A stretch of 64,000 nucleotides of DNA from Phallusia mammillata (Eukaryota): the NCBI GenBank assembly GCA_965637545.1, contig OZ281494.1, forward strand, positions 12,896,001 to 12,960,000, in the 5' to 3' direction. This document shows positions 5,301 to 55,426 of this stretch, piece by piece (positions within the stretch are counted from its first letter, which is position 1; each line of letters opens with the position of its first letter). The notes under the pieces are model-generated. The model was not told where the DNA came from. It was given only the letters and a program-made list of their open reading frames with translations, and searched no databases. The position numbers and the translations under genes were made by a program.

Positions 5301-6235
5301 CACCACTTGCAGACTCTAAAATACATGCAAAGTGTTTACAATGAAATCAAGGAAAAACAAACATCAGAAGATATTTTTAACACCTGAAGATATAGGAAGG
5401 ATGCACTGATCATGTTTCCAGATTCAACTTGGGACCAAATTTTCTCAGGAAGTTCCATTAAAACTTTTGCCTCTGCTGAAATTTCCATGTACCTAATATT
5501 CCATAATATTTTTTTTCACTAATTCTATCTATTGTTTATTAGTTTTTAGTCCATTAGAATAGATAATGATAACAAACATTAAATCAACACTCAATGCTCA
5601 ACTGATGCAATAGTCATATCAATTTTACACATTTTTGCCAATTCTGGTATCATTGGTTAAGTTAAGCCACCAAGCCCACCATGTACAAAAACGATTGCAA
5701 ACATGCAGTATTAACCTTTTGTGGTCTTTTGCAGATTGCTTTTGTTTGGCACGGGATTCTCTTTTGGTTTTGACTGTTTTGGCAGAGCAAAAAAGCTTCA
5801 AGTCTTTAATCGAGTCTCCAACATTAGCAGAACACCGTTTCATCTCTGCAATCGTGTCAGCAGCTTCAATAAGATCTCGATATCTAAATACAATTTTAGG
5901 ATTAACATTTTTAATTTTTTAATTGATAAAAGCTACTCTGTTTTAACTGACAGCTTGCACTTTTTGGCTTGAAGTTAAAACCAAATTTCCAATAAATTGC
6001 AGTATTATTCACAGTTAAAATCTTTGGCAGATATGATACATGTATTAATTTATCATGTATACAATACAAACAGCAAAATTTACAAGCAACAACCAGCAAA
6101 CTATATGTGTTACCGTTCTCCAACCATTTGTCGCAATTCCTCCTTTTTTAACTCAATTTCACGTCGAGTTTTGCTTTCCAGTTCGTTCATTTCGTCCACA
6201 TTTTTATCGGTAAAAAGTTGAGTTACTGACTCCAT
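2387..6235 (-). CDS. COG1: Conserved oligomeric Golgi complex subunit 1; exons 6235-6114, 5883-5716, 5492-5384, 5315-2953, 2615-2387 (996 aa)
   Basis: Spliced N-terminus has the Vps51/COG1 signature KKEELRQMVGERYRDLIEAADTIAEM, then KVLMELPEKIW; C-terminal WLESYVDPFDLDVFSPHI...RFSYLP. All four introns are GT-AG and phases give one open frame of 2991 nt. Confidence 0.93.
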
Positions 6236-6923
6236 GATATGCTTCTGTACCACAATCGAAAGTCGCTACATTTACTGTAACTAACTCTAGAAAAAACGAT
6301 TCCGAAAGTAGTTCACACTTTACAATTTTTATGTTTGCGAAAAATGTGAAAAATTGCCGTGTCGCCGATTGTTGTTTGTGTAATAGACCGGAAAATTTTT
6401 TAGACATCGCACAATTTCATAGACAACCTAAATTAGTAAATATCCTCCAAAAAATGAAGCATGTTACTACAGTTATTTAGCACACATTGTTTTAGAAAAG
6501 AAAAATAATAGTTTTGGCTGATAAGATTTTTTGCATGATCTTGAAATATGGCGGTTCTCAGCAGTTATCTGCTGCAACACCGGTCTCTAGATTTCTGAAA
6601 CAGGAAAATGAAACAAACAAACCAACATATTCGTAAATGCATAACGAGAAAATTATTGGTTTTCAAATACTAATCGAGTAAACTATTAAGTTTATTATTT
6701 GCGTGTGTAGTTTTGTTTCTTTTGGTTCCTTTTTACCAAATTGATTTAAGGTCAAAGTTCGTGAAAGCAAACATGGAAAGCAGTCTTGCGTGGCTGCTCC
6801 TGGCTGCATTTTCTGAAGATAGTAATAAGGGGACCTGATTTTATGTGAATAAAATTGGGTTTTTCCCATGACCTATTAATGTAGATAATTGCAGTATATG
6901 TTTTAAAATATTTGTTAAGTAGA
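6236..6923. promoter_or_regulatory. Probable bidirectional promoter region between COG1 and the ZFR-like gene
   Basis: 688 bp between divergent start codons (6235 minus, 6924 plus). Positional inference only; no specific elements identified. Confidence 0.55.
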
Positions 6924-9900
6924 ATGGCGTACTACCCAGGACAATATGGGTAAGTTTTTAAACTAAAAACATTTCAAACAATTCAGAACAAAGTTTGTTA
7001 TTTTTCAGTTGTTTTATTGTCAAAATGGTCATGTGCAATAAATTTAACTTGTAAAATAGATTAAAATGAAAATATACAAAGCACATGTATTGAATTCATC
7101 TACTGCAATTTTTTACAATATGTATTTTTAAGTAATTAGTTTTAAACATTTTAGGCAGTACAGCCAACCAACAGCAGCACCAGCAGCATCAGGATATAAC
7201 AACCCTCAACAAGTAACTGCAAATTACACACAATATGGAAATTTTAATAGTTCTGCATCTGGAACAAGCACTTCATCAACCAACACATCAACTGTTGCAT
7301 CATCATTCGGGTAATTCAACAGCTGTTTTTCTGTAGAGATAAACTGATATGTTTTTTAAAGGCCGGGAACGATTATTAGTACATCAGTGGGCCGATAGAA
7401 AACCAATAATTTGTTTCCAGTTAAAGGCCTACATTTTTACCTTTTCAATGGCAAAACAATCTCCAAAGATGTTCAAAAAATACAAACGTTAGGTGATTTA
7501 ATGGTGGGGTAACAAAAATTGCAGTGCTAAGGTTTTGCTTTGCTTTATGTATGTAATAAATGTTAATAAACAAAAACTTGTAAAAATGAAACTTAAGAAT
7601 GCCATGACAGAGCATCAAAGTTTTTTAAGTTGCTTTGCCTTTATACCAATCATCGATGGCCAATGCATAAGGCAGAGACACAGTTGTGTCATGCAATAAT
7701 AATATAGTTACAAACAGTGTTTTTTTAAGGTTTTTTTTTTCTCCAGCGGTTTCCCAAAATTTGCCAGTAGCCTAATAAATAATTCGTTTAAAGCAAATAT
7801 GGCTATTTTTTGGTATTTAAATAAAACACTTGCGGTCTCTTAAAACTACTTAGCGGTCACCCAAACCAAACCTTAAAAAAAAACCTGGTTACAAACATCC
7901 CATTTATTGGCACTCGGATGACAAAAACAATACTGTTAATCTGTACAGTACCAAGTTAATTGCCTGACATTTATTTATTACATTGCTTTTAATGTGTATG
8001 TATGCTGCACTTCTTACCAAAAAGTTTTTATCTTGAAGTTTATTAGTTGTTGCTCAAATCTTTCTGTAGCAACATGTATTAAATCATGAATTTCTTTAGT
8101 TTCTTTTCACGCTTTGTTATTTTCTGTCTTTTTTGGTAGCTACCAACAAACTTCTGTGGCAAGCACAACGCCATCACAAACAACCGCACAAACTTTTCCA
8201 TCCCAGTCATACTATGGTTACACCAACGTTAGCAGTACTACAGTCAATCAACCAACATTTCACAACTTTGCTGTAAGTGCTTTCATTCAAATCTTTGTTT
8301 TATACATTTTGTCACTTTTTATCATGAGTTTAGTAATTTGAGTGACCTAAATGCACAATGTTATGGGTGGCCTTTTTGGTTTTCTAATTTTAATCAAAAT
8401 ATCCAGTTTTTAGAAGGTTTCCTGCATAATATTTTGCTTGGATATTAAACAAAAATGAGCAATTTTATTGTGAAAGGAAAGTTGTCCTAATAAAATACTT
8501 TTACACAAACATTTATTGCATTGAAATTTGATGCTATGTTGTTGAAATATATATATATGTTGATGCCAGCCACTCTTAAAAGCAAAATTATGATGTGTTG
8601 TGTAATGTTTTTTGAACAGGTTTCATGTACAGTAAAAACTGACAAAGCATTAAATGTATGTAACTTTGCAATTCTTGTTTCAGAATCTTTGGTACAGTCA
8701 GACAACAGCAAATAACGCTGCTGCTGCTGCTCAGACAACAGCGCAACAACAACAATCCACACAGACAAGACAAGCTCAAATGTCCGTTCAACAAGTTGCT
8801 TCTTTGCATGCTCAGGTATAAGGTTAAACTGAAACCAGTGTTTCTCTTTTTTAGCTTGTTTTATTCTGGAAAACAAAAACCACCCTGGCCACTGATTTGT
8901 TTGACCTTTTATCATGATAAATAAAAAGTTGCATAAATTGAATTTTCATGCTGATGTTTTTGTAATGTTGAATGATAGATTCTAACAAATATACACTCCA
9001 TAATGTGATGTAACGCTTAAGTATGGTCAAAGGTTACTTCATTTCCCTTTTTTGAGGTACAGTTATGCCAAATATACTGCATACCTATTTGGCTTGCTGA
9101 ATATTTAGTGCCTTCAAAATAGCCCCAAGGGAGATTACATAATGAAGCTCAGACATATGTTTGCAAGCTGTGAGACTTAAGTTTTTTTTTTTAGTCAGTA
9201 TTACAGTCAAGTGGGGTAAAAAAAAAACATTTTTTGAAAATTTTGTTACCATACTTTTGTATTGTTTTGGATAAAAAAATTTGCTTCAGATGTGAGGGCA
9301 TTTTTCTACCCCAACTTCGGTATAATTTTTTTACTGCATTTAACTATGTGCTGTTTTGTGCCTAGTTTACTTATAATATTTGTAGACCAACTTACATGTT
9401 TTCTCTAATAGCATTTTCCTAAATGTAAATGTTATAGCAGTTTTCATATTGTTGCAGTACATGGGATATCAGCAGGCATTTGTACAACAGCAGCAACAAC
9501 AATATCAACAACAGCAACAACAACTTGCAAACACAGGTAATAACTTAGAGGTAGAAGTTATTCATTCCTTATAACAACTGCTTTGTTTTATGTGTAAGCA
9601 ATTGTTGGGGTGTTTTTAACGGGAGGTATAGTGAACACAATGCATCAACAATTTGCAGTTACATCTGTATTTTAAACAACCTTAATTGTTGTGGTTTAAT
9701 ACTGAAATGTTGTATTCTACAGTTGCTACTACAGCTGCATCACAACAAGCTTATAAATCACCAATTGGGGCAAAATCAAGTCCCCAATCCAACATCGGCA
9801 TAAACCAAACCACAGTTGCTGGTAAATCAGTTGTTTTTTATTGTAATATACAAATAAATATGCTGAATGTGGGATTGGTGTTTATGGTGTTTAAAAGTTG

Positions 9901-18900: not shown

Positions 18901-21900
18901 AAGAATTCAGCAGTTAAAGGGTTAACTGTTTCATTCAGAAAAATCGTAACCAACTAACCATGGACGACCGTCACATAATGGCGAAACATGCTGCTATTTA
19001 CCCACATGAAGAGGAATTGAAGTCAGTTCACGAACTGGTGACGATTGCTGAACAAGCTCTTAAAGCTCTGTCTGACCAGTTTGTTGATGAAGATCACCCT
19101 CTGCCAAAATCAGGTGAGGCAAAAATCTTTACAAGTACAATATGGAATGTGTTATGTTTTGCACTGAAATAAAATATGTAATAGCAATCATAAATAGATT
19201 GTAATTTATAAAAGACACTAATACAGTAATAGCTTACAAAGGGCATTGGCACTCTATGTTTTTTTCCATGCAACTGAATCAATCAATTTGAAGTTGGTTA
19301 TTTATGTGTCTGTTAAAGCTTTGTTTAAATTTTATATACTAAAGAAATAAAATAGTTTGCAGTGCACATTATCAACTGTAAAAACAATTAAAATACACAT
19401 AAAATGATCAATATTAACTATGCATATTTGGTAATAACCCATGAGATTGTGATAAAAAGTGTTTATTTTTATGCTCAAATATATTTTGTATTAAATGTAT
19501 AAAAAAGTGTGATGATTCAGTGTGCTATGATTAATACTTGGTGAAACATAACAATTTCACTTTATGCTTGAATTATTTAAACAGAAGAAGAAATTGAAGA
19601 GGAGAACTTGGATAAAGAGGATTCTACAGAAAAAACAGAAGATGGAAATGAAGAGAAATCTACATCTGGGGATGAAGATAAACAAGAAAAGAAAGCAAAA
19701 ATACAAATGTATGAAATCAAATATTTATTTTTGAAGCAGTTTACCAAATTGACCATTCAATGTAAAAGCATAGAGCCAATAAATGATAAGCTGCAGACTT
19801 ATCATTTATTGGCTCTATGCTTTTACATTGATACTGTGACACTGAGCCGACTGTGGTTCCCAAGCAGTTGCTTGGCCATTGTGAGCCAGTTTTATGTGTG
19901 CTGTATGCCCAGCTGTGGCATTGCACAGACTAGGTGATGCATGGGGTTGTACCCTGTTGCTCCTAACAAACTGGAGTGCCGTTGGATGGCTACACTAGCC
20001 AATGCGGCCGATCTTTCGTCACCAGCTGCACTGATGAGACCTTATAGGTCGAAACAGTGTGCACTGTCTGCAGCTGACCATTCAATGGTGTTGAGACTTT
20101 CTAATTATAATAGGTTATCTAACATAAATGATAGAGCCATTTTTGTTAAATTTTGCAGTCTTTGATTATTGAGGTAGAGCTACTAGCACCATAACTCATG
20201 TCAGTTACATTTAGCTAATTTTCAATAGGTGGCACAGGAACTGAATTATTTATTTAGCGGCTAACTAGGGTTACGGTTGGCAAGTAAGGTTTTGAAAATT
20301 ATACATTGGGAACTAAATTTTAGTTTCATTAAATGTGCGAGTTAGTTTCATTAAATGTGCGACTGATGTGAGTTATGGTGTTGGTAGATTTTCCAATCAT
20401 TGAACTAATAAAGATGCACTGCGTCTTATCATTGGTGTTTAGTAATTTTGAGTGTTATTATGTTAGAGCTTTTGTTTTTTAAATATGATTTAGGCATGAT
20501 TACATTTGTCTGTACAAACCAAAAGTTATTGGTTATCAGCATTCCGACATAGGATACACATTATTTTTTTTGTTGCAGTTTGAAAAGGCCCAAGAAGCAA
20601 CCCAAAAAGCTAATTGACACTCGCCCTCGCATCCTGTGTGCAGTCAATAGAGTTGGTACTTTAGCTAAAGGACTTCTCATTCACAACGATCCCAATGTCA
20701 GTCTTGTATTACTTTGCGGAAACGTCCCCACCCAGAAACTGCTACAGAGGGTTTTAAAGCATTTACCAGGTAAGAATGTTTGATTATGCCATATAAAATC
20801 TGCTACCAAAAACAGAATTTGTAATACACAATGAAATGTTATTCCCATGTGACAGAAAACACCTATATGAGATGCTGGCTATGTTATTTATTTCTCCAAA
20901 CAATATCACAGTGCTAAGCATATCTTTTTGTTCAGAAAAAATGAAGGAAGTTAACAAGACACTGGAGTTTGAACTTGAAGAAAATGAGGCTGGCTTCACA
21001 ATTTTTGCAAAGTTGGCTGTTAAAGTTAAGGTAAGAACTTACATTCTCAAAAGGTTTTCCGAGTTCGTGCACTTTGCAACACCACAGTTCAATACAACTT
21101 TACTCAACTTTGGGTGCTTGTAGAGGCTGTTCTAACTTCTGACAGAAACAAAACAAGAATTCACCTAGTAAAACATGCAGCTTATCATTAAAGTGAGACC
21201 TCACAAAATCAAATACTTGTGCACCTGTGTAGAAGTTGCATAACATATGATAAAGGTTGCATGTTTAAAACCCAATACATGCTACCATTTACTTACCTTG
21301 CTTTGCTGCTATGGTTAGTTGAACTTAAAATATATCACTTGCGGAAGACATTCTTAAAAGCATTTCAAAGCAACACACCATTTGCTAATGAAACCAAACT
21401 TTTGTGTTCTAAATTGCATGCTTTTTCATAGGTTTTAGTTACACTCACATCCACCTCCTTAAACAAACCAAAACCCAAAGTACAAGAAGAGAAAGAAGCT
21501 GAAGAGGAAAAGGTAACAGGGCCTGAAGGAGTGGGTGAAGATGAAGGACACAAAGAAGATGCAGAGAAGGAGGAAGAAAAGCAAGAAGGAGATCAGAGTG
21601 AAGAGGAGAAGAAAGAAGAGACAGAAGATGCAGAAAACAACCCAACAGAACAAAAGGAAGAAACTCCACCAAAAGAGCAAGAGGAATCTAATGAGCAAAA
21701 ATACACATGTGTCGATTCGGAAACAAAGATAGATGAAATAGGTTTGATTTAATCCTTGCTTTAAAATCCTAATCTATTTCAGAGAAACAACCTAATGCTT
21801 TATTAACATCCTTTCGGGCATAAATAGTTTCAATCTGGGAACCTTACATACACTTTTGTTTACGTGTTAATTTGCAATGTTTAGAAGTGGAATCAAACAA

Positions 21901-23325: not shown

Positions 23326-25020
23326 TTTTCTTCTTTTAGCTTGCTATTATAAAAAAAACGACTGTTTTGGGGGATTTATGGGCATGTTATAAATATTCTG
23401 GGGGGAGGGGTACTCTGTTGGGTGGGGGGAGGGTCTAAAACGTATGAACTCCGGAAGTTGTTGTCAAGGTAGTTTAAATAGTAAAACAGTTGTTGTCTTG
23501 GTGTATTAATCTCGCTTATGCAATACCGATATGTGCTAGAATTTGAAATGATCGTTATGAAAGTCTGTACTAAAACTACAAAACGATGAAATATGTGGGA
23601 GGGGGGTTGGGTTATTCTTATGTACAGCTATATCCTTTGTATCATAGATCTTCTGTCTTTTGTTTGCGTAAAAGCGGGGAATGTATCTAGCGCTCTGTAT
23701 AATTAAGCGCAGGAATAATTTACCATGGTTTAAACTACATTAATACGCAGAGCTGGATTTAGAGTCGACATGCAAAAACTGTGTCAAAGCAGCCATTTGC
23801 GGTCATTCCACTTCCAAACATCACAACTTTGTTGCTGCTTAACATGTTTGATTATGAACGAAAATAAAATTTCAATAAAAGCGCACACTTTCATGCGTGG
23901 CATTATTGGCGGGAAAACATGGCGGAAATTCTGAGTACCTCTTGCAGCATTTTAACCGAGATACTTGCTTCATGTTTAAACGTTAACATAAAATTACCGT
24001 CCTGGTGAATTGAAACATTAATTAGAACAGTTTTAAGTTTAGTTTTTGCGTCTTAAACGCTTCGAAAAACAAACAAAATTAAAACCCCCACGGTGGTCAT
24101 GTTTAAGGCTGGTTCAACCGATGTGAGTTAGGACGCCAAAGTCTCCGAAAGAGGAAAGCCGACAATTTGCAAGCTTGTTTGTTTGTTAGGATGACGAATT
24201 GACGACGAAGAGGACAGCGTGCAACTTTTTGTTTTGTTTCTAGGCAAAGTAAACACACATTTAAAACAAAAGCAGTTTTACTATATTTTTGAAAGTATTA
24301 ATGCAGTTAGTATGGTACTAGGGCTGTTTTGCAGGTCAAAATAATATTCTCATTTCAACAGCAAAGAAACGAAAAAGTAGTGTTATTAATTAAATGCTAT
24401 TAGCTATTGCCTATTGCGCTTAAGGATATTATGTCTAATTTATGAATAAAAGTAGATTTAAAACTTGCAAGCACAAATTTTAGTTCGCAAATTTAGTCCT
24501 GATCTAATTGCAAACATGCAGAAAATAACATGATATGTGCAAAATAACAAAAAATGTCTAAATTAAGAAATGTGATTAACGGTTTTAAATATAACACCTC
24601 GTTTTGATGTGCCACGTCCAACTGAGCAAGCTTATGTGTCATATACTCATATTGCATAAAAAAAACTCACCAGATTATGAGAAAAATACTTTACATGTTT
24701 ATTGTCCAGTCTGCAGAATATGGCAGTTCCCAACAATATCACAGGCATTTAGAAAAGGTTGTCTCGTGTGTGCGCTTGCACTGGCCTTAAGTCCGCCTGC
24801 AAGACAATGTTTAGTGCATACAATACAAGTAAGAGGGCCATGTAGTAGTTTGGGTAAATGCAGCTGCCATACTTGCAGATTGGTTTATTGTCAGGTTTGT
24901 TCACCTTATAAAGGCATTTCTGACATAATGATCTCAAGACATAATGCATTTACATACCTTAAAGTTAACATAGTTTTGTACTTTCAGTTTAAGCGATTAC
25001 AAAATAGTAACTTTGATGAC

Positions 25021-26691
25021 ATGATTTACTCCATACCACAGTACACCAAAACAGCTCTGGGCCTGTTGGATGAAATGAGAAAGAACAATGAGTTTTGTGA
25101 CATATACATCAACATTAATGGCAATAACTATGCAGCACACAAGGCAGTGCTTGTGGCTGGAAGTCTGTTCATGAGAGAAAGACTTGCTAAACTTTCTGGG
25201 ATTTTTCTGAACCTACATTTGAAGTTGTCTGACCCAGCGGTGTTTGATGATCTTCTAAAATTTCTATACACTGGAGAAATATTGCTGACAGAACAAAATG
25301 TTGCCGAAATAACAATGCTTGCCTCATACTTACAGATTAATGACATTTTAACATTAACTTCTCAGTTTTTAAATAGTATGCAACCTGTGGAAAATTTTAG
25401 CTCAAGCATTCCATTGTTTGAGGTTGCTGTTGAACATGATGGTCTATTGGAAGATTTTGATTCTAATGAGCCCGAAGAAAGCCAATTAGACGATACAAAC
25501 CTTTGTAATGACTCATCGTCAGATATGGAATGCCAGCAGAAAATTCCTTCATTTTGTACAAAAAAAGATAACTTGACCAGGGTAGCATTCATTGCAGAAG
25601 AGCAAAAATATCGCTGCAAAGTTTGCTGCAAAGATTTTTTACGGAAATCAACTTGTTCAAGTCACTGCATGACACACACCATTGACGTTTACTTTTGCAC
25701 AGACTGTTGCAAGCCCTTTGATACTCCTGAACAATTAAATGTGCATTATTCACACAATCAAACATGTTTACACTTTGCAAAAGAACAACAGCAGGTTAGC
25801 AGAGATTGTAACGACTTTCTTACCAAACAACAAGTTAATGATGGGTTTAGGTTTAAGTGTGTTGATTGTTTTAAAGCATTCCAAGATTTTAAAACATTTC
25901 AAGATCACAGACAGACAAAACATAATGTAGAGGAAGCACTCACGTGCCCATTTTGTGAGGAATCCTTTGAAGATAGTGATTCTTTGTGTGATCATATTCA
26001 AGAGCATTACAGGACAGATAGTGCAGACGCGAACAAAAAAACAAACAAATTGGACAAAATGAGTGCAACATGCCTACACTGCAATAAAGTATTTCTTAAC
26101 CGTCGCAATTTACAGCGACACTGCAAAGAGACTAGATGCGGAAAAATGTCAATTAAAAAGCGCCCAAGCAAAAATGTTGATGACAAAACAAAGGAAATTT
26201 TTGCTTTTCAATGTGCATGTGGTCCTGGCTTTTCAACTTTTGCAGAATTTGCAACACACAGTGAAGAAAAGCATGCAATGGCTGTTGATATGTTTTGTCA
26301 GTTTTGTGGTATACTATTTGGAAATGAAGAGTGGCTTGAAAAACATGTACAACAACATGTGGCTGAAAAGAAAGCTGCCATTGAAAACGGGGGAGAAAAG
26401 TTTACTTGCCAGCTGTGCGAACTAACATTTGATCATGAAGACTTATTTGAGCAACATAATAAGCAAAAATGTTCTGATTCTTGTCGATTTTGTTCTAAAC
26501 CTTTTGACAAACGTCTGAACCTTGTACGTCACATAAAAATGCACACTGGTGAAAAACCATTCCCTTGCTTTGAATGCAATAGCAGATTTGGTCGTAAAGA
26601 TACAATGTTTCAACATTTGCGTGTCATGCACTCAATTGTAATGCCAAAGCAGCTTGTGGCATTAAAATTTCCTGGTAAAACAAGCAGGTGA
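25021..26691 (+). CDS. BTB/POZ-zinc finger protein, array member 1 (intronless CDS)
   Basis: BTB MIYSIPQY...LLDEMRKNNEFCDIYINING...HKAVLVAGS...LLKFLYTGEI; many C2H2/C2HC fingers including HTGEKPFPC. Start set at the family MIY motif, not at 24604. Confidence 0.92.
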   Translation: MIYSIPQYTKTALGLLDEMRKNNEFCDIYININGNNYAAHKAVLVAGSLFMRERLAKLSGIFLNLHLKLSDPAVFDDLLKFLYTGEILLTEQNVAEITMLASYLQINDILTLTSQFLNSMQPVENFSSSIPLFEVAVEHDGLLEDFDSNEPEESQLDDTNLCNDSSSDMECQQKIPSFCTKKDNLTRVAFIAEEQKYRCKVCCKDFLRKSTCSSHCMTHTIDVYFCTDCCKPFDTPEQLNVHYSHNQTCLHFAKEQQQVSRDCNDFLTKQQVNDGFRFKCVDCFKAFQDFKTFQDHRQTKHNVEEALTCPFCEESFEDSDSLCDHIQEHYRTDSADANKKTNKLDKMSATCLHCNKVFLNRRNLQRHCKETRCGKMSIKKRPSKNVDDKTKEIFAFQCACGPGFSTFAEFATHSEEKHAMAVDMFCQFCGILFGNEEWLEKHVQQHVAEKKAAIENGGEKFTCQLCELTFDHEDLFEQHNKQKCSDSCRFCSKPFDKRLNLVRHIKMHTGEKPFPCFECNSRFGRKDTMFQHLRVMHSIVMPKQLVALKFPGKTSR

Positions 26692-27181
26692 TAGTGAATT
26701 TGCCAGTACTGATCTAACTCATACCTGGGCTTTGTGTGTTTAACAGCTATGCATATTTATGGCCCTTTGGTTGTCTCCATCTGACCTGTTTAAGCTATTT
26801 GGGTATTACAGAATAAATATGTGTCATGCATAGACTAAAGCAGCATTGCTTACTCGCATACAAAATAATGAAAAAAACATGTGACTGTGACACAAAAGTA
26901 ACATAATGATATATATACTCTTTTCACTTGTCAAAGTCTATGATTGTCGAACTATTCGTAATGAAAAAATGGTGCAAAGCTGTAAAAAAATTGCCAGAGT
27001 CATGTTTTGTTATTTATGTCTGTGCATTTTGTAGGTTCCAGTGGCAACTTGCAAAATTAGTGATACCTTATGCATTTTGTCATACATACAAAATTTGTTT
27101 TTTAAGTTTGTTTAAATCTTTCTTTATGTTTTCTAGACAAGTTTGCTGTAGGGTTGTTAATAAATTGAAACTTCGCAGAAA

Positions 27182-28873
27182 ATGATTTTTTCATCACCCG
27201 AGTACCCTGTGACAGCCCTGAAGCTGCTAAATGAAATGCGACAAAACAATGAATTCTGTGACATTCTGATCAGCATCAATGGAACAAAATATGCGGCACA
27301 TAAAGCCATTTTGGTTGCTGGCAGCCAATACATGCGACAACATCTTGCCAACCTTACTACAAAGGTGTTTGTTCTTAATTTGCAGTTGACAAGTCTAAGT
27401 GTGTTTGAAGAAGTTCTACAGTTTCTGTACAATGGACAAATTGAACTTACAGAGCAAAATATTGCTGAAATGACCATGTTAGCTTCCTATCTTCAGATGC
27501 CGGAACTGCTAAATCTTACTTCCCAGTTTATTAACAGCTTTCAAGAGTTTAGTGTTGCAAATGAATTGGCCGAGTTGGAATACTCAATTGAACCACAGGA
27601 TGTTTCGAATGACCAAATGAGTTTTCTAGACCAAGATGATAGTACTGAGAATGAATTGACTTCTTCACCTGCCAAAAAACAGAAAACAAGCACTTGCAAT
27701 GAAGAAGATAACTCTACAATAAAGCTTTACGAGCGGCGGTGGAAAAAATTTCAATGCAAAACTTGTGGTAAACAGTTTTCACGCAAATATATTTGTATCA
27801 ACCACTGCTTATCACATGTTGATAAGAGCAGTGGCTCATTCTTATGCAATCATTGTGGAAACCTCCATAAAACTGTGGATGAGTTAAGAACTCATTATTC
27901 ACAAAGCAGAGAGTGTTGGCTTGCAGGACTGAATCGTTCACAACAAAACTCCACCCTCTTTCCTTATTTAAGCAAGCGTGATATCTTAAATGGATTACGA
28001 TTTAAATGTGATGTTTGTTTTGAAAAATATGAGAATTTTGTTCCTTTTCAAACTCACAGGCGCAATGAACATGGAATAGAAGAGACCCTGAAATGTTCAA
28101 TATGCAATGAATGTTTCGATACAGAGGAGTTTCTTACTTGTCATATACCAGAGCATTATAAAGTAACAAAGAATTACGAAAGGCAACAAAGGAGTACAAA
28201 AAGACCAACATACCAGCCTAAAGACACAGATCCAAGCTGTCCAATTTGTCGTAAATTATTTTCGTGTAAAAAAACACTAAAGCGTCACTTGGAAACCAAC
28301 AGAAGAGGACACTGTGGAAAACTTCTTCAGAAAATTAATAGCTCTGAAGAAACTAGTTCACCCACAGAAGAAGAACAGAATGAGTCTTCAGACAATATTA
28401 CCGGTTATCTGTGTGATGGTTGTAAGGTCGGATTTGAAAAGTTCGCTGAATTTGCATCGCACTGTCTAGAACTGCATGGCACCAATCCTGAGATGAAGTG
28501 TAGGTTTTGTGAACTTGTGTTTGCAAAAGAACTATGGGTTGACAAACATGTAGAGTATCATGTCACTCAAAAACAAGAAGAAACAGCCAAGGGAGAGGAA
28601 TACACATGCCAACTTTGTGCCGCCACATTTCAAAGTGACAATAATTTTCAGTGCCACAAAACAATGAAATGTGCATCTGAGTGCAGGTTCTGTGGAAAAA
28701 GGTTCAGTCGATTTGCTAATCTTAGAAGACATGTTCGCACTCATACTGGGGATCGACCATATCCATGTTTTGAGTGTGATTTATCATTTGCACGGAAAGA
28801 CATCTTGTTTCAGCATCTTCGTCTGAGACATTCCATTGTAATGCCAAGGCAGTCTATGATTGAAACAATGTAA
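27182..28873 (+). CDS. BTB/POZ-zinc finger protein, array member 2 (563 aa)
   Basis: BTB FCDILISING..HKAILVAGSQYM..FLYNGQI; fingers ending HTGDRPYPCFECD. Confidence 0.93.
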   Translation: MIFSSPEYPVTALKLLNEMRQNNEFCDILISINGTKYAAHKAILVAGSQYMRQHLANLTTKVFVLNLQLTSLSVFEEVLQFLYNGQIELTEQNIAEMTMLASYLQMPELLNLTSQFINSFQEFSVANELAELEYSIEPQDVSNDQMSFLDQDDSTENELTSSPAKKQKTSTCNEEDNSTIKLYERRWKKFQCKTCGKQFSRKYICINHCLSHVDKSSGSFLCNHCGNLHKTVDELRTHYSQSRECWLAGLNRSQQNSTLFPYLSKRDILNGLRFKCDVCFEKYENFVPFQTHRRNEHGIEETLKCSICNECFDTEEFLTCHIPEHYKVTKNYERQQRSTKRPTYQPKDTDPSCPICRKLFSCKKTLKRHLETNRRGHCGKLLQKINSSEETSSPTEEEQNESSDNITGYLCDGCKVGFEKFAEFASHCLELHGTNPEMKCRFCELVFAKELWVDKHVEYHVTQKQEETAKGEEYTCQLCAATFQSDNNFQCHKTMKCASECRFCGKRFSRFANLRRHVRTHTGDRPYPCFECDLSFARKDILFQHLRLRHSIVMPRQSMIETM

Positions 28874-29333
28874 AAAAATGTGATATGTGTGTGCTGACAC
28901 TTTAATTCTATATGATCTGTGTTAAATTTTGCTTACATTGATAAACTGCAAACTTTATGTACCAGCGGTTTCCATCTATTTATAATCATACACTTATACA
29001 TAAATAATGGTTCATTGCCATTTCTGTGCAGGTAGAATTTCAACCTTACTAAATATCCTTATGTACCACATTGAATTATTTGCATGCCACAGGTGAATGG
29101 CTGGAAACCACTGGTAAACATCATTGTATTAGTGCATGGTTTAGGTATTTCCTTTTTTACGCTGTGTAAAATTGTGCATTAGTTTAAAGCAAACAATAGA
29201 TTGAAATGTTGTGGTGTTATAACAATGTGTGTGTGTATATATGTTGAAGTCACAATTGCAACCATTTATTTCAATGCGTCTTTTACATTTGCAGGAAAAA
29301 ATAGGAAAAACTTACTGTTTAATTTCTGCTAAA

Positions 29334-31412
29334 ATGATCTATGTTGCTACTGAGCATTCCATCACAGTTTTGAAGCTGCTAAACAATCTCCGAAAAAACA
29401 ATGAATTCTGTGACATCACTGTTAACATAAATGGCTCCAAGTTCCGTGCACACAAGTCAGTACTTGCAGCAAGTAGTCAATATATGCGACAACATCTACA
29501 ATCTGAAAACTTTATACAGTTAAGTTTAAAGTTGAAAAGTACCACGATTTTTCAAGATGTTCTTGAATTTTTGTACACTGGAGAAATTGTGTTGACAAAT
29601 GAAAATATTGCTGAAGTGACCATGCTGGGTTCATACTTGAAAATTAATGATCTAACTAGGCTTACTGTTCAGTATTTAAATGGAATGCAAGCAAAAGGCA
29701 GTCTTGCTTCCCAAAAGTCACCATCTGTTCAAGTCATTGTACATGAAGGAAAAAGTTTAAACCCTTTCAACCAAAAATTTACTGTAAAGGATGGTAGACT
29801 TGCAACCTGGCAAACACCAATTAAAAAAATAAAAACTGAATCCTACCAATCCATGCAAACATTAAACCTAAATTCAAAAGTACTTTTGCTATCAGAAAGG
29901 AAAACTGATGATGAAAGGGAAGATTTTGATGACCTTGAACCAGCGTTTGAAGATGATACATTAATGCAAAGTGACAACGATTCTCTGCCTATTCATGAAT
30001 CACCAATGAGTGTTTCATCCTTCTATTTCAAGTCAATTATTCCACAAGCTTCTGGCATCAGTGATCGCCATGCTGTCAATGAGTCTTTGTCAAGCAACGA
30101 ACAGATAGAGCCCAATAAAATTGAACTTGAACCTGAAGTTGAACTGACTATGAAGGGGAGTCTGCTACTGAAAGAACAGTTTATGTCAGAACCCTATCTT
30201 ACCATGATGGACATATCGAATGGTCTTTTGTTTAAATGTGACATTTGTTTGGAAACATTTTGTAACTTTGATTTATTTAAAGAGCATAGAATGTTGTCAC
30301 ATGAATTAGAAGAAACACCAAAGTGCTGGATATGTGGAGAACAATTTGATTCTGGTAATGACCTTGCTCTGCATGTTCATGTCCATTATTTTGAGAAAGG
30401 TGATAAAATATTTAGAACTATTACCCAATCTGTAGAAGCAAATATTTTTCCTTGTCTTATGTGCAGTGAACAATTTTCCAAACACAAAGATTTGCAGCAA
30501 CATTTGGAAACAAGCCATGAAGAGGACTGGCCTTTTACTTGCACCAAATGTGGTGTTACTTTTGAACATAACCAAGCCCTTGGATTGTCTTTACACATAT
30601 TGTCACTGCATGCAAAGAGAAAAAAGCAATCAGCTTATTTCAGTGAGTCACAAAGAAACGAAAAAGACAAGGAGTATTTATGCACAGATTGTGGCTTGAT
30701 TTATACATCGAAGGAAATTTATGAGGAGCATGTTGAATCAAAGTGCACTCAAAGAGGTCATGTTTGCCAAATTTGCTCACGTTCTTTCACCAGACCTCAG
30801 TTACTAAGGCGTCATCTAACTCTTCCAAGGTTCTCCTGTGGTGAAGAATTGAAGAAATGGAGGAAAGATAATAATAAGATTAATGTCACAGAGGTTTTGC
30901 CACGACAAAATCCTGTCCCTGGATACCTTTGTGGAGACTGTGACTCAGGTTTCCAAAAGTTTAATGAGTTTAATACACATAGACTGGAAAAACACAATGC
31001 TAGTGAAGAACCGAAATGTCGTTTTTGTGATCTGGTAATAAGTGATGAAAAAAAACTTGATAAACATGTTAGTATCCATGTTGCAAGTAAAACATCAGCT
31101 AGGACCAAAAGGCGTCACCCTTCTCTTACCGAAGATGGAAAATGGACATGTATTGTTTGTGAAGCTGTTTTCGAACTTGAAAGTGATTATAGGTTTCATA
31201 AAACACTTCGATGTGCATTAAAATGCAGATTTTGCAACTTTTCCTCTGGAAAGAAGCAACGTCTTAGACAACACGTCAGTGGGCACTTAAGGGTCTTGCC
31301 TTTTCCCTGTTTAAAGTGTGACAAGGCATTTAGTTGGAGACAAAGTTTGCTAAACCACATGCACACTCAACATGCTGTTGAAAGTGTAATAAACTTAGAT
31401 GATTCAATATAA
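29334..31412 (+). CDS. BTB/POZ-zinc finger protein, array member 3
   Basis: MIYVATEH start; BTB FCDITVNING..HKSVLAASSQYM..FLYTGEI; finger array; close paralog of member 4. Confidence 0.92.
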   Translation: MIYVATEHSITVLKLLNNLRKNNEFCDITVNINGSKFRAHKSVLAASSQYMRQHLQSENFIQLSLKLKSTTIFQDVLEFLYTGEIVLTNENIAEVTMLGSYLKINDLTRLTVQYLNGMQAKGSLASQKSPSVQVIVHEGKSLNPFNQKFTVKDGRLATWQTPIKKIKTESYQSMQTLNLNSKVLLLSERKTDDEREDFDDLEPAFEDDTLMQSDNDSLPIHESPMSVSSFYFKSIIPQASGISDRHAVNESLSSNEQIEPNKIELEPEVELTMKGSLLLKEQFMSEPYLTMMDISNGLLFKCDICLETFCNFDLFKEHRMLSHELEETPKCWICGEQFDSGNDLALHVHVHYFEKGDKIFRTITQSVEANIFPCLMCSEQFSKHKDLQQHLETSHEEDWPFTCTKCGVTFEHNQALGLSLHILSLHAKRKKQSAYFSESQRNEKDKEYLCTDCGLIYTSKEIYEEHVESKCTQRGHVCQICSRSFTRPQLLRRHLTLPRFSCGEELKKWRKDNNKINVTEVLPRQNPVPGYLCGDCDSGFQKFNEFNTHRLEKHNASEEPKCRFCDLVISDEKKLDKHVSIHVASKTSARTKRRHPSLTEDGKWTCIVCEAVFELESDYRFHKTLRCALKCRFCNFSSGKKQRLRQHVSGHLRVLPFPCLKCDKAFSWRQSLLNHMHTQHAVESVINLDDSI

Positions 31413-31737
31413 GTGTTATCAAACATGTCAACTTTATCAAAACCATCATTACAATTGCCTTTTTTCAGTTTATTTCTAATGTAAGCAGTTCAGTGATATA
31501 CCATTGATTTCATATGCTTTGCTTCAATTTGTTTTGCTACACTACAGTACTTTTTTACTTGCCTTACCTTCATTATGTTTAGATAAGGTTTTGATGCTTT
31601 ATTTTCTTTTTTCAAATAGGAAAAAAACTGTGTAGATACCATTAAAGTTATTTTGTACATCCTAATGGGAAAGATTTCTGAATTGCCTCATTGCTGAACA
31701 CTTTGGATTTAAAGATTGCTGGTTCCCTTATTGAGTC

Positions 31738-33864
31738 ATGATCTATGCATCACCGGATTATTGTCAAACAGCTCTGAAGCTGTTGAATGAATTGCGCCAA
31801 AATAATGAATTCTGTGACATTACTGTTGACATTGATGGAACTAAATACACAGCACACAAATCAGTACTTGTAGCAGGTAGCCAATATATGCGACAGCATC
31901 TGCCTGCATTATCTGAAAACTTCATACAGCTTAACTTAAAGTTGACAATAACAGACATTTTTGAACATGTTCTTAATTTTTTGTACACTGGAGAAATTGC
32001 ATTGACAAATGGAAATGTTTCAGAATTGACGATGTTGGGCTCTTATTTGCAAATTACAGAACTGACTTGGTTGACTGTTCAGTTTTTAAATGGAATGCAA
32101 ATTCAGAATGGGTTGGGTTGTGATATGTCTCCAGCAGTACAAGTCATTGTACAGGAAGAAAAAAGTTTAGATGATTTAAACCAAACCACATCTGAGCCGG
32201 ATGATGCAATAGTAGCTTGTTCCACTCCTAAGAAAAAAATCAAAAAAGAATCATACAAAGTCGTGCAAACATTACATTTAAATTCAAAATTAGTTGTAAT
32301 ATCAGAAAGAAAAATGGAAGACGAAAAGGATGATTTCAATGACACTGGATCGGAACTTGCTAATGATACAATAATGCAGAGTGATGATGATATTCATTCT
32401 AATCACAATTCACCTACAAAGATTTCATCTTTATATACATTTGACGAAAAGCTGGACAAGTATGAATGTATCATCTGTGGCAAGATGTTTAACCGAAAAA
32501 CTTCTTGTCTCAGTCATTGCAAGACCCACAGCGAATTTGTTGATGCTTCTTTGGTAAAGAGCGAACGAAAGAAACCTGTTAAAACTAGTTCAAGACCTCA
32601 TCGTCAACTAACAATGAAGGACAGCATAATACTGCGAAAACGGCTGATGTCAAAACCTTACCTTAGCAGAAAAAATATTTCTAATGGTCTGTTGTTTAAA
32701 TGTGACATCTGTTGGGAAACTTTTCGTAAATTTGACTCATTTAAAGAGCATAGAATGTTGTCACACGAAATTGACGAGATACCTAAGTGTTGGGTATGTG
32801 AAGATGTGTTTCAGTCTGGAGATGACCTTGCTCAGCATGTTCCTGTGCATTATTTTAAAGAAGGTCAAAATTTTCAAAAAAAATCTAAACCAAAAACACT
32901 ACCAAAGATACTGCCCTGCCTGTTGTGTGATGAACAATTTGCTGAGCAAGTTGACTTGCAACAACATCTTGAAACAATGCATGAAGAGGACTGGCCTATA
33001 ACCTGTATTGATTGTAATATTACTTTTGAAAGCCATCATGACTCTTCATTGTCTTTGCATATACAGTCGTGCCACTCAATGAAAGAAAAACCTCCAACAA
33101 AGAAAGAACCTGAAGAATTCTTATGTACAGAATGTGGCCTGATTTTCAGATTGCAAGAAATTTATGAAGAGCATGTTGCTTCACGATGTGCACATCGCGG
33201 TCATGTTTGTCAAATTTGTTCACGCTCTTTCACAAGTCCTCAAGGGTTAAAGCGTCATCATAAGTCTGAAAAATTTTCATGTGGTGAACAAATAAAAAAA
33301 TGGAGGCTTGATAATGACAAGATTGATGTCAGAAAAGTTAAGTCTCAGGAACATGTGTTGGAATATCTTTGCACGGATTGTAACTCAGGTTTCCATAAAT
33401 TTGATGAGTTTTACTCACATCGATTGGAAATACACAATACCAGTGAAGAAATGAGGTGTCGATTTTGTGATTTTGTGGCAAATTATAAATCTCAACTTGA
33501 CAAACACGTTTATTTCCATGCTGTACGGAGAAATTGTGCAAGGGTAAGAAGACGATACCCATCACTAACGGAAGATGGAAAATGGACATGTATTGTTTGT
33601 GAAGCAATTTTTGAACATGAAAGTGATTATCGTTTTCACAAAACACTTAGGTGTGCCATTAAATGCAGATTTTGTAAGTTTTCAAGTGGAAGAAAAAAAC
33701 TCCTGAGGAGTCATATAAGCCGACATCTACAGAATCTACCGTTTCCCTGTTTAAAGTGTGACATGGCCTTTAGTCGAAGATGGAGTTTAAACAAACATAT
33801 GCAGAAACAACATGCGGTTGAAAGTCTCCTTAATAAAAGTCTAAACTATGAAACTGTGACATAG
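31738..33864 (+). CDS. BTB/POZ-zinc finger protein, array member 4 (708 aa)
   Basis: BTB FCDITVDIDG..HKSVLVAGSQYM..FLYTGEI; finger array. Confidence 0.93.
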   Translation: MIYASPDYCQTALKLLNELRQNNEFCDITVDIDGTKYTAHKSVLVAGSQYMRQHLPALSENFIQLNLKLTITDIFEHVLNFLYTGEIALTNGNVSELTMLGSYLQITELTWLTVQFLNGMQIQNGLGCDMSPAVQVIVQEEKSLDDLNQTTSEPDDAIVACSTPKKKIKKESYKVVQTLHLNSKLVVISERKMEDEKDDFNDTGSELANDTIMQSDDDIHSNHNSPTKISSLYTFDEKLDKYECIICGKMFNRKTSCLSHCKTHSEFVDASLVKSERKKPVKTSSRPHRQLTMKDSIILRKRLMSKPYLSRKNISNGLLFKCDICWETFRKFDSFKEHRMLSHEIDEIPKCWVCEDVFQSGDDLAQHVPVHYFKEGQNFQKKSKPKTLPKILPCLLCDEQFAEQVDLQQHLETMHEEDWPITCIDCNITFESHHDSSLSLHIQSCHSMKEKPPTKKEPEEFLCTECGLIFRLQEIYEEHVASRCAHRGHVCQICSRSFTSPQGLKRHHKSEKFSCGEQIKKWRLDNDKIDVRKVKSQEHVLEYLCTDCNSGFHKFDEFYSHRLEIHNTSEEMRCRFCDFVANYKSQLDKHVYFHAVRRNCARVRRRYPSLTEDGKWTCIVCEAIFEHESDYRFHKTLRCAIKCRFCKFSSGRKKLLRSHISRHLQNLPFPCLKCDMAFSRRWSLNKHMQKQHAVESLLNKSLNYETVT

Positions 33865-34052
33865 CTGTCCAAATTTTTTTGGAAAACTTTTTATTTTTTT
33901 TAGTGTTTTTAACACAGATTTTTTTTGTTTATTTGTGTATATGTGTACTTTCATGTCTTGTTTGTTTTTCAGGTTGTAGGTTAGGTGACAAAATATTTTT
34001 GGTGACAAAAATATTCTTTGTAATATTCTGAATCACTGAAAACCATATTATC

Positions 34053-48431: not shown

Positions 48432-49158
48432 ACTGTTTGAGGAAATTTTAACTTGAAGCCATGCACTTACCCATGTTAATTTTTTGATGATTAAAATGCT
48501 CAATTACCCCAAAGCTGTTGTTAGGTTGTTTGTTTACCTTTTTGATCAACGAGACTCAAAGTTTGGATAAAAAATATTTATTGGTAAAAACAATTGCTTT
48601 ATGAGTCCCTTATTACTGGCCTGTGAAATATTTTAAATGATAACCCAAGGATGCAATCTTCAACTTTATTGTGCTGCAGGAATATATGTTGTGTCTGAAG
48701 TATTTTTTTTTAATTGCTGGTGTTATTTTTAGAATTGTCAATTTACATGATAATAATTATCTTTTTGCTGAAATGAAATTTTCGGAAAATCAGGATATTT
48801 TACCTGTTGCCAAATAGTGGAAGCAAATTTACTTCTATTTGACTATTTTGTTTTGTTAACCATTTTTCATCAGCCATCTTTGTTTGTATGAGGATCCTAC
48901 TTTGAAACTACTCAAAGTGTTTTTGTTTTATTTTATCTTTGTGCTAACTGCCTGGTGAATGTTTTTCCTAATTTGTCACTGTGCTCTTGTTTGTGTGTTT
49001 GTTAGCTTATACGCATGTATTGCATAGATCGTAAATAAACTGGTTCCTGACTGTAAGTTGCACTTTTCTTCACCCCGGGTCCGCAACAGACAGAGCGTAG
49101 CATGAGCGTTTACCAACGAAAATTGTAGGCTTAAGAGTGGTAGTAGTTTGTTGTAGTG

Positions 49159-49414
49159 CAGGGGCGGGCAACCTTTGTTACTGTGGGGTCAATTACAAAT
49201 GTCAAAATTGGACCGCGGGCCGCATCTGTTTTGCTTTGTTGCTTACAAAATATGCTTAACTACAATTCGTATTTGATTCTAGCCACATTTTGCCAGGTCG
49301 CAGAAAACTAGCATCAGGCGCATTAATCAGCTCAAAAATATGTAATTATTGGACTCGTTTGCCAGTACTTCTGAAACCCAAGCGTCTCTGCGGGCCACAG
49401 GTTCCCCACCCCTG
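49159..49414. mobile_element. hAT-Charlie-type MITE
   Basis: TIRs CAGGGGCGGGCAACCT / AGGTTCCCCACCCCTG; perfect TSD TTGTAGTG at 49151-49158 and 49415-49422; GCGGGCC subterminal motifs. Confidence 0.9.
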
Positions 49415-49977
49415 TTGTAGTGTGTCTACTATTGTAATTGTACCACCTTTTTGATGCACTATCGTTCTCTTGAAAAACGTTCCACTACATTATTGTTTTT
49501 TTTTTTGGTTTTCAAATTGTTGTTTCACGTCTATATTCCAGCCAAAAAGCCGTAAGTCTTGCATTTATGTGAAGATTTCATGGAATCGCAACATCAGTTT
49601 AAAATCGTCCATGTAGAGAAAAAGGGTAAAGAGCTCTACACTATTTACTTAAATGTGGGTTAATTTGCATTTAGCATACATTTTGTGAGTGTTTGACTGG
49701 TAGTTGTCTGCCTTGCTGCGCCAGCTAGCTCAAATACGAAATTTTGCATTGTTGTTTTGGTGCCGTGCGTAAACTACCCATAGTTTTAAGAAACATCGGT
49801 TCGAGCTCTGAAAGTTCGCCGCTGCATTGTACGTGTTTGATCACGTTTTTTCCCCACATCGTAGAGTGGTTCCGGTTTTAGGCAATGCAATTGTACTGTA
49901 TACGATTCAGGCCTATGTATGTATGTATGCATTTCTCAAAACTTGCCTTCGCTTGCAAATGGCCCATGGTGCCACTA

Positions 49978-50914: not shown

Positions 50915-55426
<4,512 letters not shown>

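What the first reader, a model, noticed from the sequence alone, without database searches (positions are those of the whole stretch)
20023..20076. Complete canonical hammerhead ribozyme on the sense strand of an intron of a dsRNA-binding DZF gene
Seen: a textbook type I hammerhead (8-bp stem I, CUGAUGA, 5-bp stem II, GAAA, 5-bp stem III, GUC triplet, cleavage predicted after 20068) in the intron between ZFR exons ending 19707 and starting 20579, in the transcribed orientation. Established: intronic hammerheads with conserved cores are known in amniotes (HH9 in RECK, HH10), and ZFR-family proteins bind dsRNA and regulate splicing. Inference: it would cut ZFR pre-mRNA co-transcriptionally, so it is either tolerated, conformationally silenced, or part of a splicing or autoregulatory circuit. 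I could not identify the extended stem I bulge that normally docks loop 2, so cleavage rate is unknown.
Basis: partly seen in the sequence, partly recalled or inferred. Interest (0 to 1): 0.92.

Follow-up and report, generated by a model that had tools for sequence, protein, structure and literature searches.

The report
Hammerhead retroelement copy in ZFR intron
The hammerhead ribozyme is real and intact, but it is the working end of a ~276-nt mobile element present in thousands of copies in this genome that happened to land in an intron of a ZFR-like gene, so it is an ordinary transposon insertion and not a device of that gene.

Summary
Window 20023-20076 (+) carries a complete type I hammerhead: CUGAUGA, GAAA, an A15.1-U16.1 pair, C17 at 20068, and helices I, II and III. 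It lies in the sense strand of intron 19709-20578 of a DZF-domain (ZFR-like) gene.

The gene-specific reading does not hold.
- **Repeat family.** Contigs of two independent DNA runs pile up on 19740-20109 at summed depths of 5,000-220,000, against 8-22 for the flanks. More than 4,000 contigs per run match.
- **Family ends.** Copies end at 20072-20075, and tandem joints 20073>19798 define a 276-nt unit.
- **Locus layout.** One full unit sits at 19798-20075. A 42-nt inverted copy of the unit junction lies head to head with it at 19757-19798. A perfect 13-nt target-site duplication flanks both. The insert is a 50% GC island in a 29-32% GC intron.

This is the insertion pattern of Penelope-like elements and their non-autonomous derivatives, the animal non-LTR retrozymes.

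Whether this copy cuts ZFR pre-mRNA could not be tested, because only contigs were available and no raw RNA reads. Folding predicts a competing hairpin that hides the catalytic core, favoured by 3.4-4.3 kcal/mol.

Earlier notes of this scan record the same kind of element many times elsewhere in this genome. Interest is low: a new member of a known kind.

The parts
19750..19762 (.). Left copy of the 13-nt target-site duplication TGACCATTCAATG. Its last 6 nt, TCAATG, are also complementary to unit positions 29-34, a possible microhomology.
   Evidence: family D5, 100% identical, spacing 325. loose ends show that sequence outside the element is not conserved among copies.
19757..19798 (-). Inverted, 5'-truncated copy. 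Its reverse complement is GTCTGCAG|CTTATC...CATTGA, that is, the last bases of the ribozyme, the cleavage site, and the first 34 nt of the next unit (the 'tail'). With 19798-19831 it forms a perfect 34-bp hairpin.
   Evidence: pair I1 (34 nt, 100% complementary). One search gives a letter-for-letter match to the tandem junction. In one search, 60 X4 contigs continue past 19798 with the antisense ribozyme.
19798..20075 (+). One full unit (276-nt period plus 2 nt) of a high-copy, non-coding, hammerhead-bearing retroelement. GC is 50%, against 29-32% in the flanking intron.
   Evidence: summed contig depth 5,000-52,000 (X3) and 25,000-220,000 (X4) against 8-22 for the flanks. Joints 20073>19798 'go back 276'. 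Copies end at 20072-20075. Composition.
20023..20076 (+). Type I hammerhead ribozyme. Helix I 20023-30/20069-76, CUGAUGA 20031-37, helix II 20038-50, GAAA 20051-54, helix III 20054-67. Predicted cleavage is after C 20068.
20025..20062 (+). Predicted competing hairpin. 20025-20035 pairs with 20053-20062 on top of helix II and sequesters CUGAUGA and GAAA. GCACUG occurs twice, at 20028-33 and 20061-66.
   Evidence: The hammerhead fold is disfavoured by 3.4-4.3 kcal/mol in element, intron and dimer contexts. This is thermodynamic prediction only.
20075..20087 (.). Right copy of the target-site duplication TGACCATTCAATG.
   Evidence: family D5.
19709..20578 (+). Host intron (GT...AG) of the DZF-domain (ZFR-like) gene. 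Exons end at 19708 and start at 20579.
   Evidence: DZF_N profile positions 38-74 lie upstream and 85-133 downstream. The frame is kept across the junction.

Best explanation
The hammerhead is the 3'-terminal ribozyme of one copy of a ~276-nt non-autonomous retroelement. The family is of the animal non-LTR retrozyme / Penelope-like-element (PLE) derived kind.

How it got here (inferred from the layout). The element was inserted into the ZFR-like intron by target-primed reverse transcription. The enzyme would be a PLE-type reverse transcriptase/endonuclease that extends both cleaved DNA strands. That would leave three things: a full direct unit whose 3' end is at the family's usual end (20075); a short inverted copy that starts about 34 nt further downstream in the template (the 'tail') and stops at the ribozyme cleavage site; and a 13-nt target-site duplication.

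What the ribozyme does (inferred from published work on such elements). It serves the element by cutting multimeric or read-through transcripts into unit-length RNAs that can circularise. It does not serve the host gene.

Effect on the host (inferred). In this sense-strand intronic copy the ribozyme is probably tolerated. The catalytic fold is predicted to be out-competed by a hairpin that buries the core, and any cleavage must compete with splicing of an 870-nt intron.

Shown here: the motif, the repeat family, the unit length, the ends, the inverted fragment, the duplication, and the host gene and strand.
For: - **Motif.** It is complete and not a chance match.
- **High-copy family.** 4,463 contigs (X3) and 5,224 contigs (X4) at 80% likeness or more lie on 19740-20109. 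Summed depth is up to 52,000 and 220,000, against 8-22 for the flanks.
- **Family ends.** 338 and 386 contigs break at 20075 into unrelated AT-rich sequence (table 7).
- **Tandem unit.** Joints 20072-20075>19797-19798 appear in both DNA runs and in one contig of a run guessed to be RNA (table 5).
- **Conserved ribozyme.** No variant row is listed between 20018 and 20205, although this is the deepest stretch. 19 variant rows fall in 19893-20017 (table 3).
- **Insertion scars.** The 13/13 duplication and the perfect 34-bp inverted arm. The arm's reverse complement equals the tandem junction. The insert is a GC island.
- **Present in independent samples.** Contigs with 0-2 mismatches span a junction in two runs of different studies: X3 records 10 and 15, X4 record 17.
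- **Literature on PLE insertions.** They show 5' truncation, partial tandems, an adjacent inverted 5'-truncated copy and a 30-40-bp tail (PMC8557442). A purified PLE protein extends both DNA strands, and starts reverse transcription at two internal sites whose spacing is the tail (PMC11167929).
- **Literature on retrozymes.** Animal type I hammerheads lie in ~150-450-bp non-LTR retrozyme repeats with longer duplications than the 4 bp of plant retrozymes (PMC7229834). These repeats are related to PLE terminal repeats, and about 44% of Xenopus copies are intronic (bioRxiv 10.64898/2026.07.22.740005).
- **Earlier scan notes.** They report the same kind of element elsewhere in this genome.
Against: - No family copy other than this one could be read directly. 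The family picture rests on one read-laying run on contigs, whose depth is not a true copy number.
- No autonomous PLE sharing this 3' module was identified here.
- The ribozyme has a stable 5-bp helix III, unlike the minimal hammerheads typical of PLE terminal repeats (PMC7761336).
- No loop 1 partner for loop 2 could be recognised.
- The 5' ends of the two copies lie 0-5 nt from the cleavage site rather than exactly on it, so use of a self-cleaved template is not shown.
- Self-cleavage and circular RNA were not observed. Only contigs were on hand, and the RNA label of X6 and X11 is a guess by the tool.
Confidence: 0.85

Rival explanations
1. Domesticated regulator. This particular sense-strand copy cleaves ZFR pre-mRNA co-transcriptionally and has been retained to tune ZFR output, in the manner of the intronic CPEB3 ribozyme or of HH9/HH10.
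For: The core is intact and identical to the family majority. It is in sense orientation inside a coding gene. The insertion is present in two independent samples. Intronic ribozymes can set mRNA levels by competing with splicing (PMC10919898 abstract).
Against: It is one of thousands of copies. The intact 13/13 duplication and the 68 unmutated arm bases point to a recent neutral insertion, not long retention. The predicted inactive conformer is favoured by 3.4-4.3 kcal/mol. There are no cross-species data.
Confidence: 0.04
2. Truncated autonomous Penelope-like element. The 278 nt are only the terminal-repeat end of a heavily 5'-truncated coding PLE, not a separate non-autonomous (retrozyme) family.
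For: PLE insertions are usually strongly 5'-truncated and carry the hammerhead in the terminal repeat. The last ~115 nt (19962-20075) are 6-9 times deeper than the rest, as expected from truncation or from a 3' module shared with other elements.
Against: Tandem joints with a 276-nt period exist in both DNA runs. The direct copy begins exactly at that unit boundary, so a short complete unit exists. Joints of 121-122 nt (20075>19954/5) point to still shorter non-coding units. Helix III is full-length, unlike the minimal PLE hammerheads.
Confidence: 0.09
3. Chance match or tRNA-derived SINE. The motif is either a random occurrence, or the ribozyme of a Pol III SINE of the schistosome Sm-alpha type moved by LINEs.
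For: The loose sequence pattern CTGATGA..GAAA..GTH is expected by chance about once per window. A 13-nt duplication would also fit LINE-mediated insertion.
Against: The strict structural descriptor scored 0 of 600 shuffled strands. The ribozyme is the best conserved part of a high-copy family. ARAGORN found no tRNA-like part and no tRNA, 5S or 7SL hit appears even at E up to 10. There is no A-rich tail: copies end at 20075 inside helix I. The head-to-head inverted fragment is not a LINE/SINE feature.
Confidence: 0.02

Closest known systems
Animal non-LTR retrozymes (Cervera & de la Pena 2020, PMC7229834; Li, Clavereau & Pollet 2026 preprint)
   Same: A type I hammerhead in a non-coding unit of a few hundred nt. 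GC is at or below 50%. There is no LTR, PBS or PPT. The target duplication is longer than 4 bp. Tandem copies exist in the genome and monomers are scattered through it, introns included. The unit folds stably with the ribozyme hidden (circular fold -94.5 kcal/mol, z -3.6).
   Different: This locus holds a single unit plus an inverted fragment, so it cannot release a unit-length RNA by two cleavages. Circular RNA was not shown. Helix III is a stable 5 bp, whereas many animal type I motifs have a weak helix III. No loop 1 was recognised.
Penelope-like elements and their terminal-repeat hammerheads (PMC4209133, PMC8557442, PMC11167929)
   Same: The insertion architecture matches: an adjacent inverted 5'-truncated copy, a ~34-nt tail on one side, a defined internal 3' end, AT-rich flanks, and the hammerhead near the 3' end.
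   Different: There is no reverse transcriptase / GIY-YIG reading frame in the 278-nt unit. The ribozyme is a full three-helix motif, not the minimal dimer-dependent variant.
HH9 / HH10 intronic hammerheads of amniotes (Rfam RF02275, RF02277)
   Same: Type I hammerhead on the sense strand of an intron. HH9 is the best, though weak, Rfam hit (19.8 bits).
   Different: HH9 and HH10 are single-copy and conserved at orthologous positions. This motif is one copy of a high-copy repeat with fresh insertion scars, and it scores far below the gathering score of 52.
CPEB3 intronic HDV-like ribozyme (PMC10919898)
   Same: A self-cleaving motif in an intron, whose cleavage would compete with splicing.
   Different: It belongs to a different ribozyme class, is conserved in mammals, and has been shown experimentally to affect expression. 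None of that is shown here.

Membership tests
Hammerhead ribozyme, type I | Conserved core: C3 U4 G5 A6 N7 G8 A9, G12 A13 A14, an A15.1-U16.1 pair, and H17 at the cleavage site | tested here: met
   All are present at 20031-37, 20051-54, 20054/20067 and C20068. The G10.1-C11.1 pair is 20038/20050.
Hammerhead ribozyme, type I | Three helices around the core, with helix I open and helices II and III closed by loops | tested here: met
   The MFE fold of 20015-20085 is this junction. The descriptor scan gives helices of 8, 5 and 6 pairs.
Hammerhead ribozyme, type I | Tertiary contact between loop 2 and a loop or bulge in helix I | tested here: inconclusive
   Helix I is an uninterrupted 7 bp (8 at this locus), followed by unpaired strands. 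No bulge was recognised. The helix II geometry (4 bp plus a 5-nt loop) is shared with many metagenomic hammerheads, but the contact itself cannot be judged from sequence.
Hammerhead ribozyme, type I | Score at or above the Rfam gathering threshold for a hammerhead model | tested here: not met
   There is no match at gathering score. Best hits are HH9 at 19.8 bits against 52 and RAGATH-1-hammerhead at 21.1 against 56.3.
Hammerhead ribozyme, type I | Self-cleavage after H17 | not testable with these tools
   Only contigs were available, no raw reads.
Animal non-LTR retrozyme | Short (150-450 bp) non-coding unit with a type I hammerhead, occurring as tandem repeats | tested here: met
   This holds at family level. 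Joints 20073>19798 give a 276-nt period in X3 and X4. This locus itself is a monomer plus an inverted fragment.
Animal non-LTR retrozyme | No LTR, PBS or PPT; GC below about 50%; target duplication longer than 4 bp | tested here: met
   Unit GC is 49.6%, the duplication is 13 nt, and there are no terminal direct repeats beyond it.
Animal non-LTR retrozyme | Expression as unit-length linear and circular RNA | tested here: inconclusive
   Contigs of two runs guessed to be RNA match the family. One carries a back-joint 20073>19798. Contigs cannot tell a circle from a tandem, and the RNA label is a guess.
Penelope-like element (autonomous) | Reading frame encoding a reverse transcriptase, usually with a GIY-YIG endonuclease | tested here: not met
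   The unit is 278 nt and has no reading frame that could hold one.
Penelope-like element (insertion signature) | Adjacent inverted 5'-truncated copy, 30-40-bp tail at one end, target duplication | tested here: met
   Inverted copy at 19757-19798, equal to the ribozyme end plus a 34-nt tail. 13-nt duplication. Criteria are from PMC8557442 and PMC11167929.
Conserved intronic hammerheads (HH9/HH10 kind) | Single-copy, kept at the orthologous intron across species | tested here: not met
   The single-copy criterion fails: thousands of copies. Orthologous conservation could not be tested, because every run found belongs to the same organism.
tRNA-derived SINE with hammerhead (Sm-alpha kind) | tRNA-like Pol III promoter region | tested here: not met
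   ARAGORN finds nothing in 19600-20500. No tRNA, 5S or 7SL match appears at E up to 10.

The most novel reading that the evidence does not exclude
This sense-strand copy is catalytically active in ZFR pre-mRNA and has been co-opted. Cleavage after 20068 would compete with splicing and set ZFR output. The adjacent perfect 34-bp RNA hairpin (19757-19831) would act as a ligand for the dsRNA-binding DZF protein itself, closing an autoregulatory loop. The competing hairpin 20025-20062 would act as the switch.
Probability: 0.03. Interest if true: 0.6.

Novelty: new member of a known kind. Interest (0 to 1): 0.15.

Why it matters
In itself it matters little. It adds one more intronic copy of a hammerhead-bearing retroelement in a genome that holds thousands.

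Its use is as a clean, well-delimited example. It has a full unit, an inverted tail-bearing fragment and an intact duplication. Together these fit the two-start-site, both-strands model of Penelope-type insertion proposed from in vitro work.

It is also a natural test case for how a cell copes with an intact self-cleaving ribozyme on the sense strand of an essential gene's intron.

Tried and rejected
- **Rfam at gathering score over the whole window:** no family. The permissive scan gave only weak hammerhead hits, plus spurious miRNA-like hits caused by the perfect hairpin.
- **Second copy in the window:** none by BLAST or by descriptor. The only other CTGATGA..GAAA..GTH match (3653-3707) has no helices and is at chance level.
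- **Scan-notes look-up by sequence:** blank.
- **Metagenome scan for the ribozyme core:** it returned 120 or more contigs. None shares anything with the element beyond the ribozyme. They are unrelated hammerheads with the same helix II, so no family alignment or covariation test could be made.
- **tRNA-derived SINE reading:** rejected.
- **RNA evidence:** the two runs guessed to be RNA gave no contigs on the ZFR exons or the unique intron parts. Nothing can therefore be said about splicing, retention or cleavage at this locus.
- **Empty-site allele:** no joint skipping 325 nt was among the 15 shown, but 231 joints were not shown, so polymorphism is not excluded.
- **Organism:** it was coded by the tools and I did not try to uncover it.

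Full report
**Observation**

The sequence at 20023-20076 (+) reads CAGCUGCA-CUGAUGA-GACCU-UAU-AGGUC-GAAA-CAGU-GUGC-ACUG-UC-UGCAGCUG. Every invariant hammerhead position is present:
- C3-A9 at 20031-37.
- G12-A14 at 20051-53.
- A15.1-U16.1 at 20054/20067.
- C17 at 20068.
- The G10.1-C11.1 pair at 20038/20050.

On its own the 71-nt stretch folds into the three-way junction (-21.4 kcal/mol, z -1.8). My structural descriptor finds this one site on both strands of the window. A strict version of it (helix I at least 6 pairs, helices II and III at least 4) scored 0 of 600 dinucleotide-shuffled strands. A bare sequence pattern, by contrast, is at chance level.

Rfam does not call the motif. Nothing reaches gathering score. 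At permissive settings Hammerhead_HH9 reaches 19.8 bits against a cut-off of 52.

- Helix III is A-CAGU/ACUG-U with a GUGC loop.
- The eighth pair of helix I uses a base of the flanking target.
- The upstream exon ends at 19708.

**Host gene**

Plus-strand reading frames at 18960-19172 and 20580-20783 match DZF_N (profile positions 38-74 and 85-133). The frame at 22261-22608 matches DZF_C. GT at 19709 and AG at 20577-78 keep the frame (...KIQ-I-LKRPKK...).

**What it belongs to**

The window holds no second copy, so I used public runs of the same (coded) organism. I laid contigs of two DNA runs from different studies and of two runs guessed to be RNA on 19000-21200 at 80% likeness.

- **Depth.** Unique intron and exon sequence has depth 8-22. 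Stretch 19740-19961 has 5,000-8,300 (X3) and 25,000-34,000 (X4). Stretch 19962-20109 has 44,000-52,000 and about 220,000.
- **Contig counts.** 4,463 and 5,224 contigs were laid.
- **Caveat.** Depth summed over contigs is not a copy number. The order of magnitude, thousands of copies, is still clear.
- **Ends.** 338 (X3) and 386 (X4) contigs break off at 20075, and smaller numbers at 20072-20074. They continue into unrelated AT-rich sequence. This is the family's 3' end, 4-7 nt past the cleavage site.
- **Unit length.** Joints from 20072-20075 back to 19797-19798 occur in both DNA runs and define a tandem period of 276 nt. Joints of 121-122 nt (20075>19954/5) suggest a shorter sister unit.
- **Conservation.** Among the variant rows shown, 19 fall in 19893-20017 and none in 20018-20205. 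Yet 19962-20109 is the deepest stretch, and rows are kept by support. The ribozyme is thus the most uniform part of the family, and this copy matches the majority there.

**Anatomy of the locus**

- A perfect 13-nt direct repeat, TGACCATTCAATG, sits at 19750-62 and 20075-87.
- The direct unit runs 19798-20075.
- To its left, 19757-19790 and 19798-19831 form a 34-bp, 100% complementary inverted repeat.
- The reverse complement of 19757-19798 is, letter for letter, GTCTGCAG followed by the first 34 nt of the unit. That is the tandem junction.
- The left arm is therefore an inverted copy. It starts 34 nt into the 'next unit' and stops at the ribozyme cleavage site.
- The insert has 50% GC, in an intron of 29-32% GC.
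- Contigs with 0-2 mismatches cross a junction of the insertion in X3 (records 10 and 15) and X4 (record 17). The insertion is therefore present in two independent samples.

**Comparison with the literature**

- PLE insertions are described as strongly 5'-truncated and often in partial tandem. They often carry an inverted 5'-truncated copy directly at the 5' end and a 30-40-bp tail at one end, with the hammerhead in the terminal repeat (PMC8557442).
- A purified PLE protein cleaves and extends both DNA strands. It starts reverse transcription at two internal sites of the RNA, and the spacing of those sites is the tail. Target sites are AT-rich (PMC11167929).
- The locus fits this model. One strand is primed at the usual start (20075) and copied through a whole unit. 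The other is primed about 34 nt further on and copied only as far as the cleavage site.
- Type I hammerheads of animals lie in non-LTR retrozymes of about 150-450 bp with GC below 50% and duplications longer than the 4 bp of plant retrozymes (PMC7229834).
- A 2026 preprint relates these retrozymes to PLE terminal repeats. It finds about 44% of Xenopus copies in introns, although they are depleted there.
- The unit is too short to encode a protein, so it is non-autonomous.
- It shows no tRNA-like part and no A-rich tail, which argues against a classical SINE.

**How it works**

The motif, the family and the insertion scars are shown here. Two steps are inferred from the cited work:
- The ribozyme serves the element by cutting multimeric or read-through transcripts to unit length for circularisation.
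- A Penelope-type enzyme supplied in trans moved it.

That both copies have their 5' ends within 0-5 nt of the cleavage site is compatible with self-cleaved templates, but does not prove it. In vitro, cleavage was not needed for PLE insertion.

**Effect on ZFR**

This could not be tested. All runs were contigs, which cannot show RNA ends. The two runs guessed to be RNA gave nothing on the ZFR exons.

Folding gives one lead. GCACUG occurs twice, at 20028-33 and 20061-66, so CAGUGU (20055-60) can pair with either. The alternative extends helix II into a long hairpin (20025-35 with 20053-62) that buries CUGAUGA and GAAA.
- In the context of the element, the intron or a tandem dimer, this fold is favoured by 3.4-4.3 kcal/mol.
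- The hammerhead helices then have pair probabilities of 0.5% or less.
- The unit folded as a circle gives -94.5 kcal/mol (z -3.6) with the ribozyme hidden. This is the behaviour described for retrozyme and viroid-like RNAs.
- These are thermodynamic predictions. They ignore tertiary contacts and co-transcriptional folding.

My reading is that the copy is tolerated: at most a minor fraction of transcripts would be cut.

**Verdict**

The gene-specific interpretation is not supported. The element is a new member of a known kind.

Earlier notes of this scan describe the same kind of element many times on other DNA of this genome. They report units of 273-294 nt, duplications of 11-13 bp and head-to-head Penelope-type scars. 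One note, s1-408661, covers this very unit. I used these notes as leads only.

Noticed in passing
window 20173-20394: A second dispersed repeat lies in the same intron. Contig depth is 300-2,700 against 9-22 for unique sequence. It has imperfect 33-nt inverted ends (20173-20205 / 20362-20394) and a 21-nt tandem duplication at 20320-20362, so it looks like a MITE. Contigs of the runs guessed to be RNA also match 20184-20331.
   Followed up: no
L001-L120 (metagenome contigs): At least 120 metagenome contigs carry hammerheads with the same helix II (GACC-N5-GGUC). 95 motifs have closed helices II and III and a 6-7-bp helix I. Several contigs hold 2-3 of them 500-950 nt apart (for example L031, L045, L011). 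A helix I sequence, agattaa/ttaatct, recurs, and helix III varies by compensating changes. They are unrelated to the window element outside the ribozyme.
   Followed up: partly
window 19757-19831: A perfect 34-bp hairpin with a 7-nt loop would be transcribed within the intron of a dsRNA-binding-protein gene. It produces spurious weak miRNA-family hits in Rfam. It is a by-product of the head-to-head insertion. Whether it is processed into small RNAs is unknown.
   Followed up: no
window 19910-19929 versus 20022-20038: The unit contains an internal look-alike of the 5' strand of helix I (CCAGCUGUGGCAUUGCACAG against CCAGCUGCACUGAUGAG). In the whole-element fold it pairs with the 3' strand of helix I and with helix III. 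It may be a built-in competitor, or the remnant of an internal duplication.
   Followed up: partly
window 19955-20075: Joints 20075>19954/19955 appear in X4 contigs, and the last ~115 nt are 6-9 times deeper than the rest. Together these suggest a shorter sister family with a ~121-nt tandem unit that shares the ribozyme module. An earlier scan note (s1-375407) describes a ~130-nt family.
   Followed up: no
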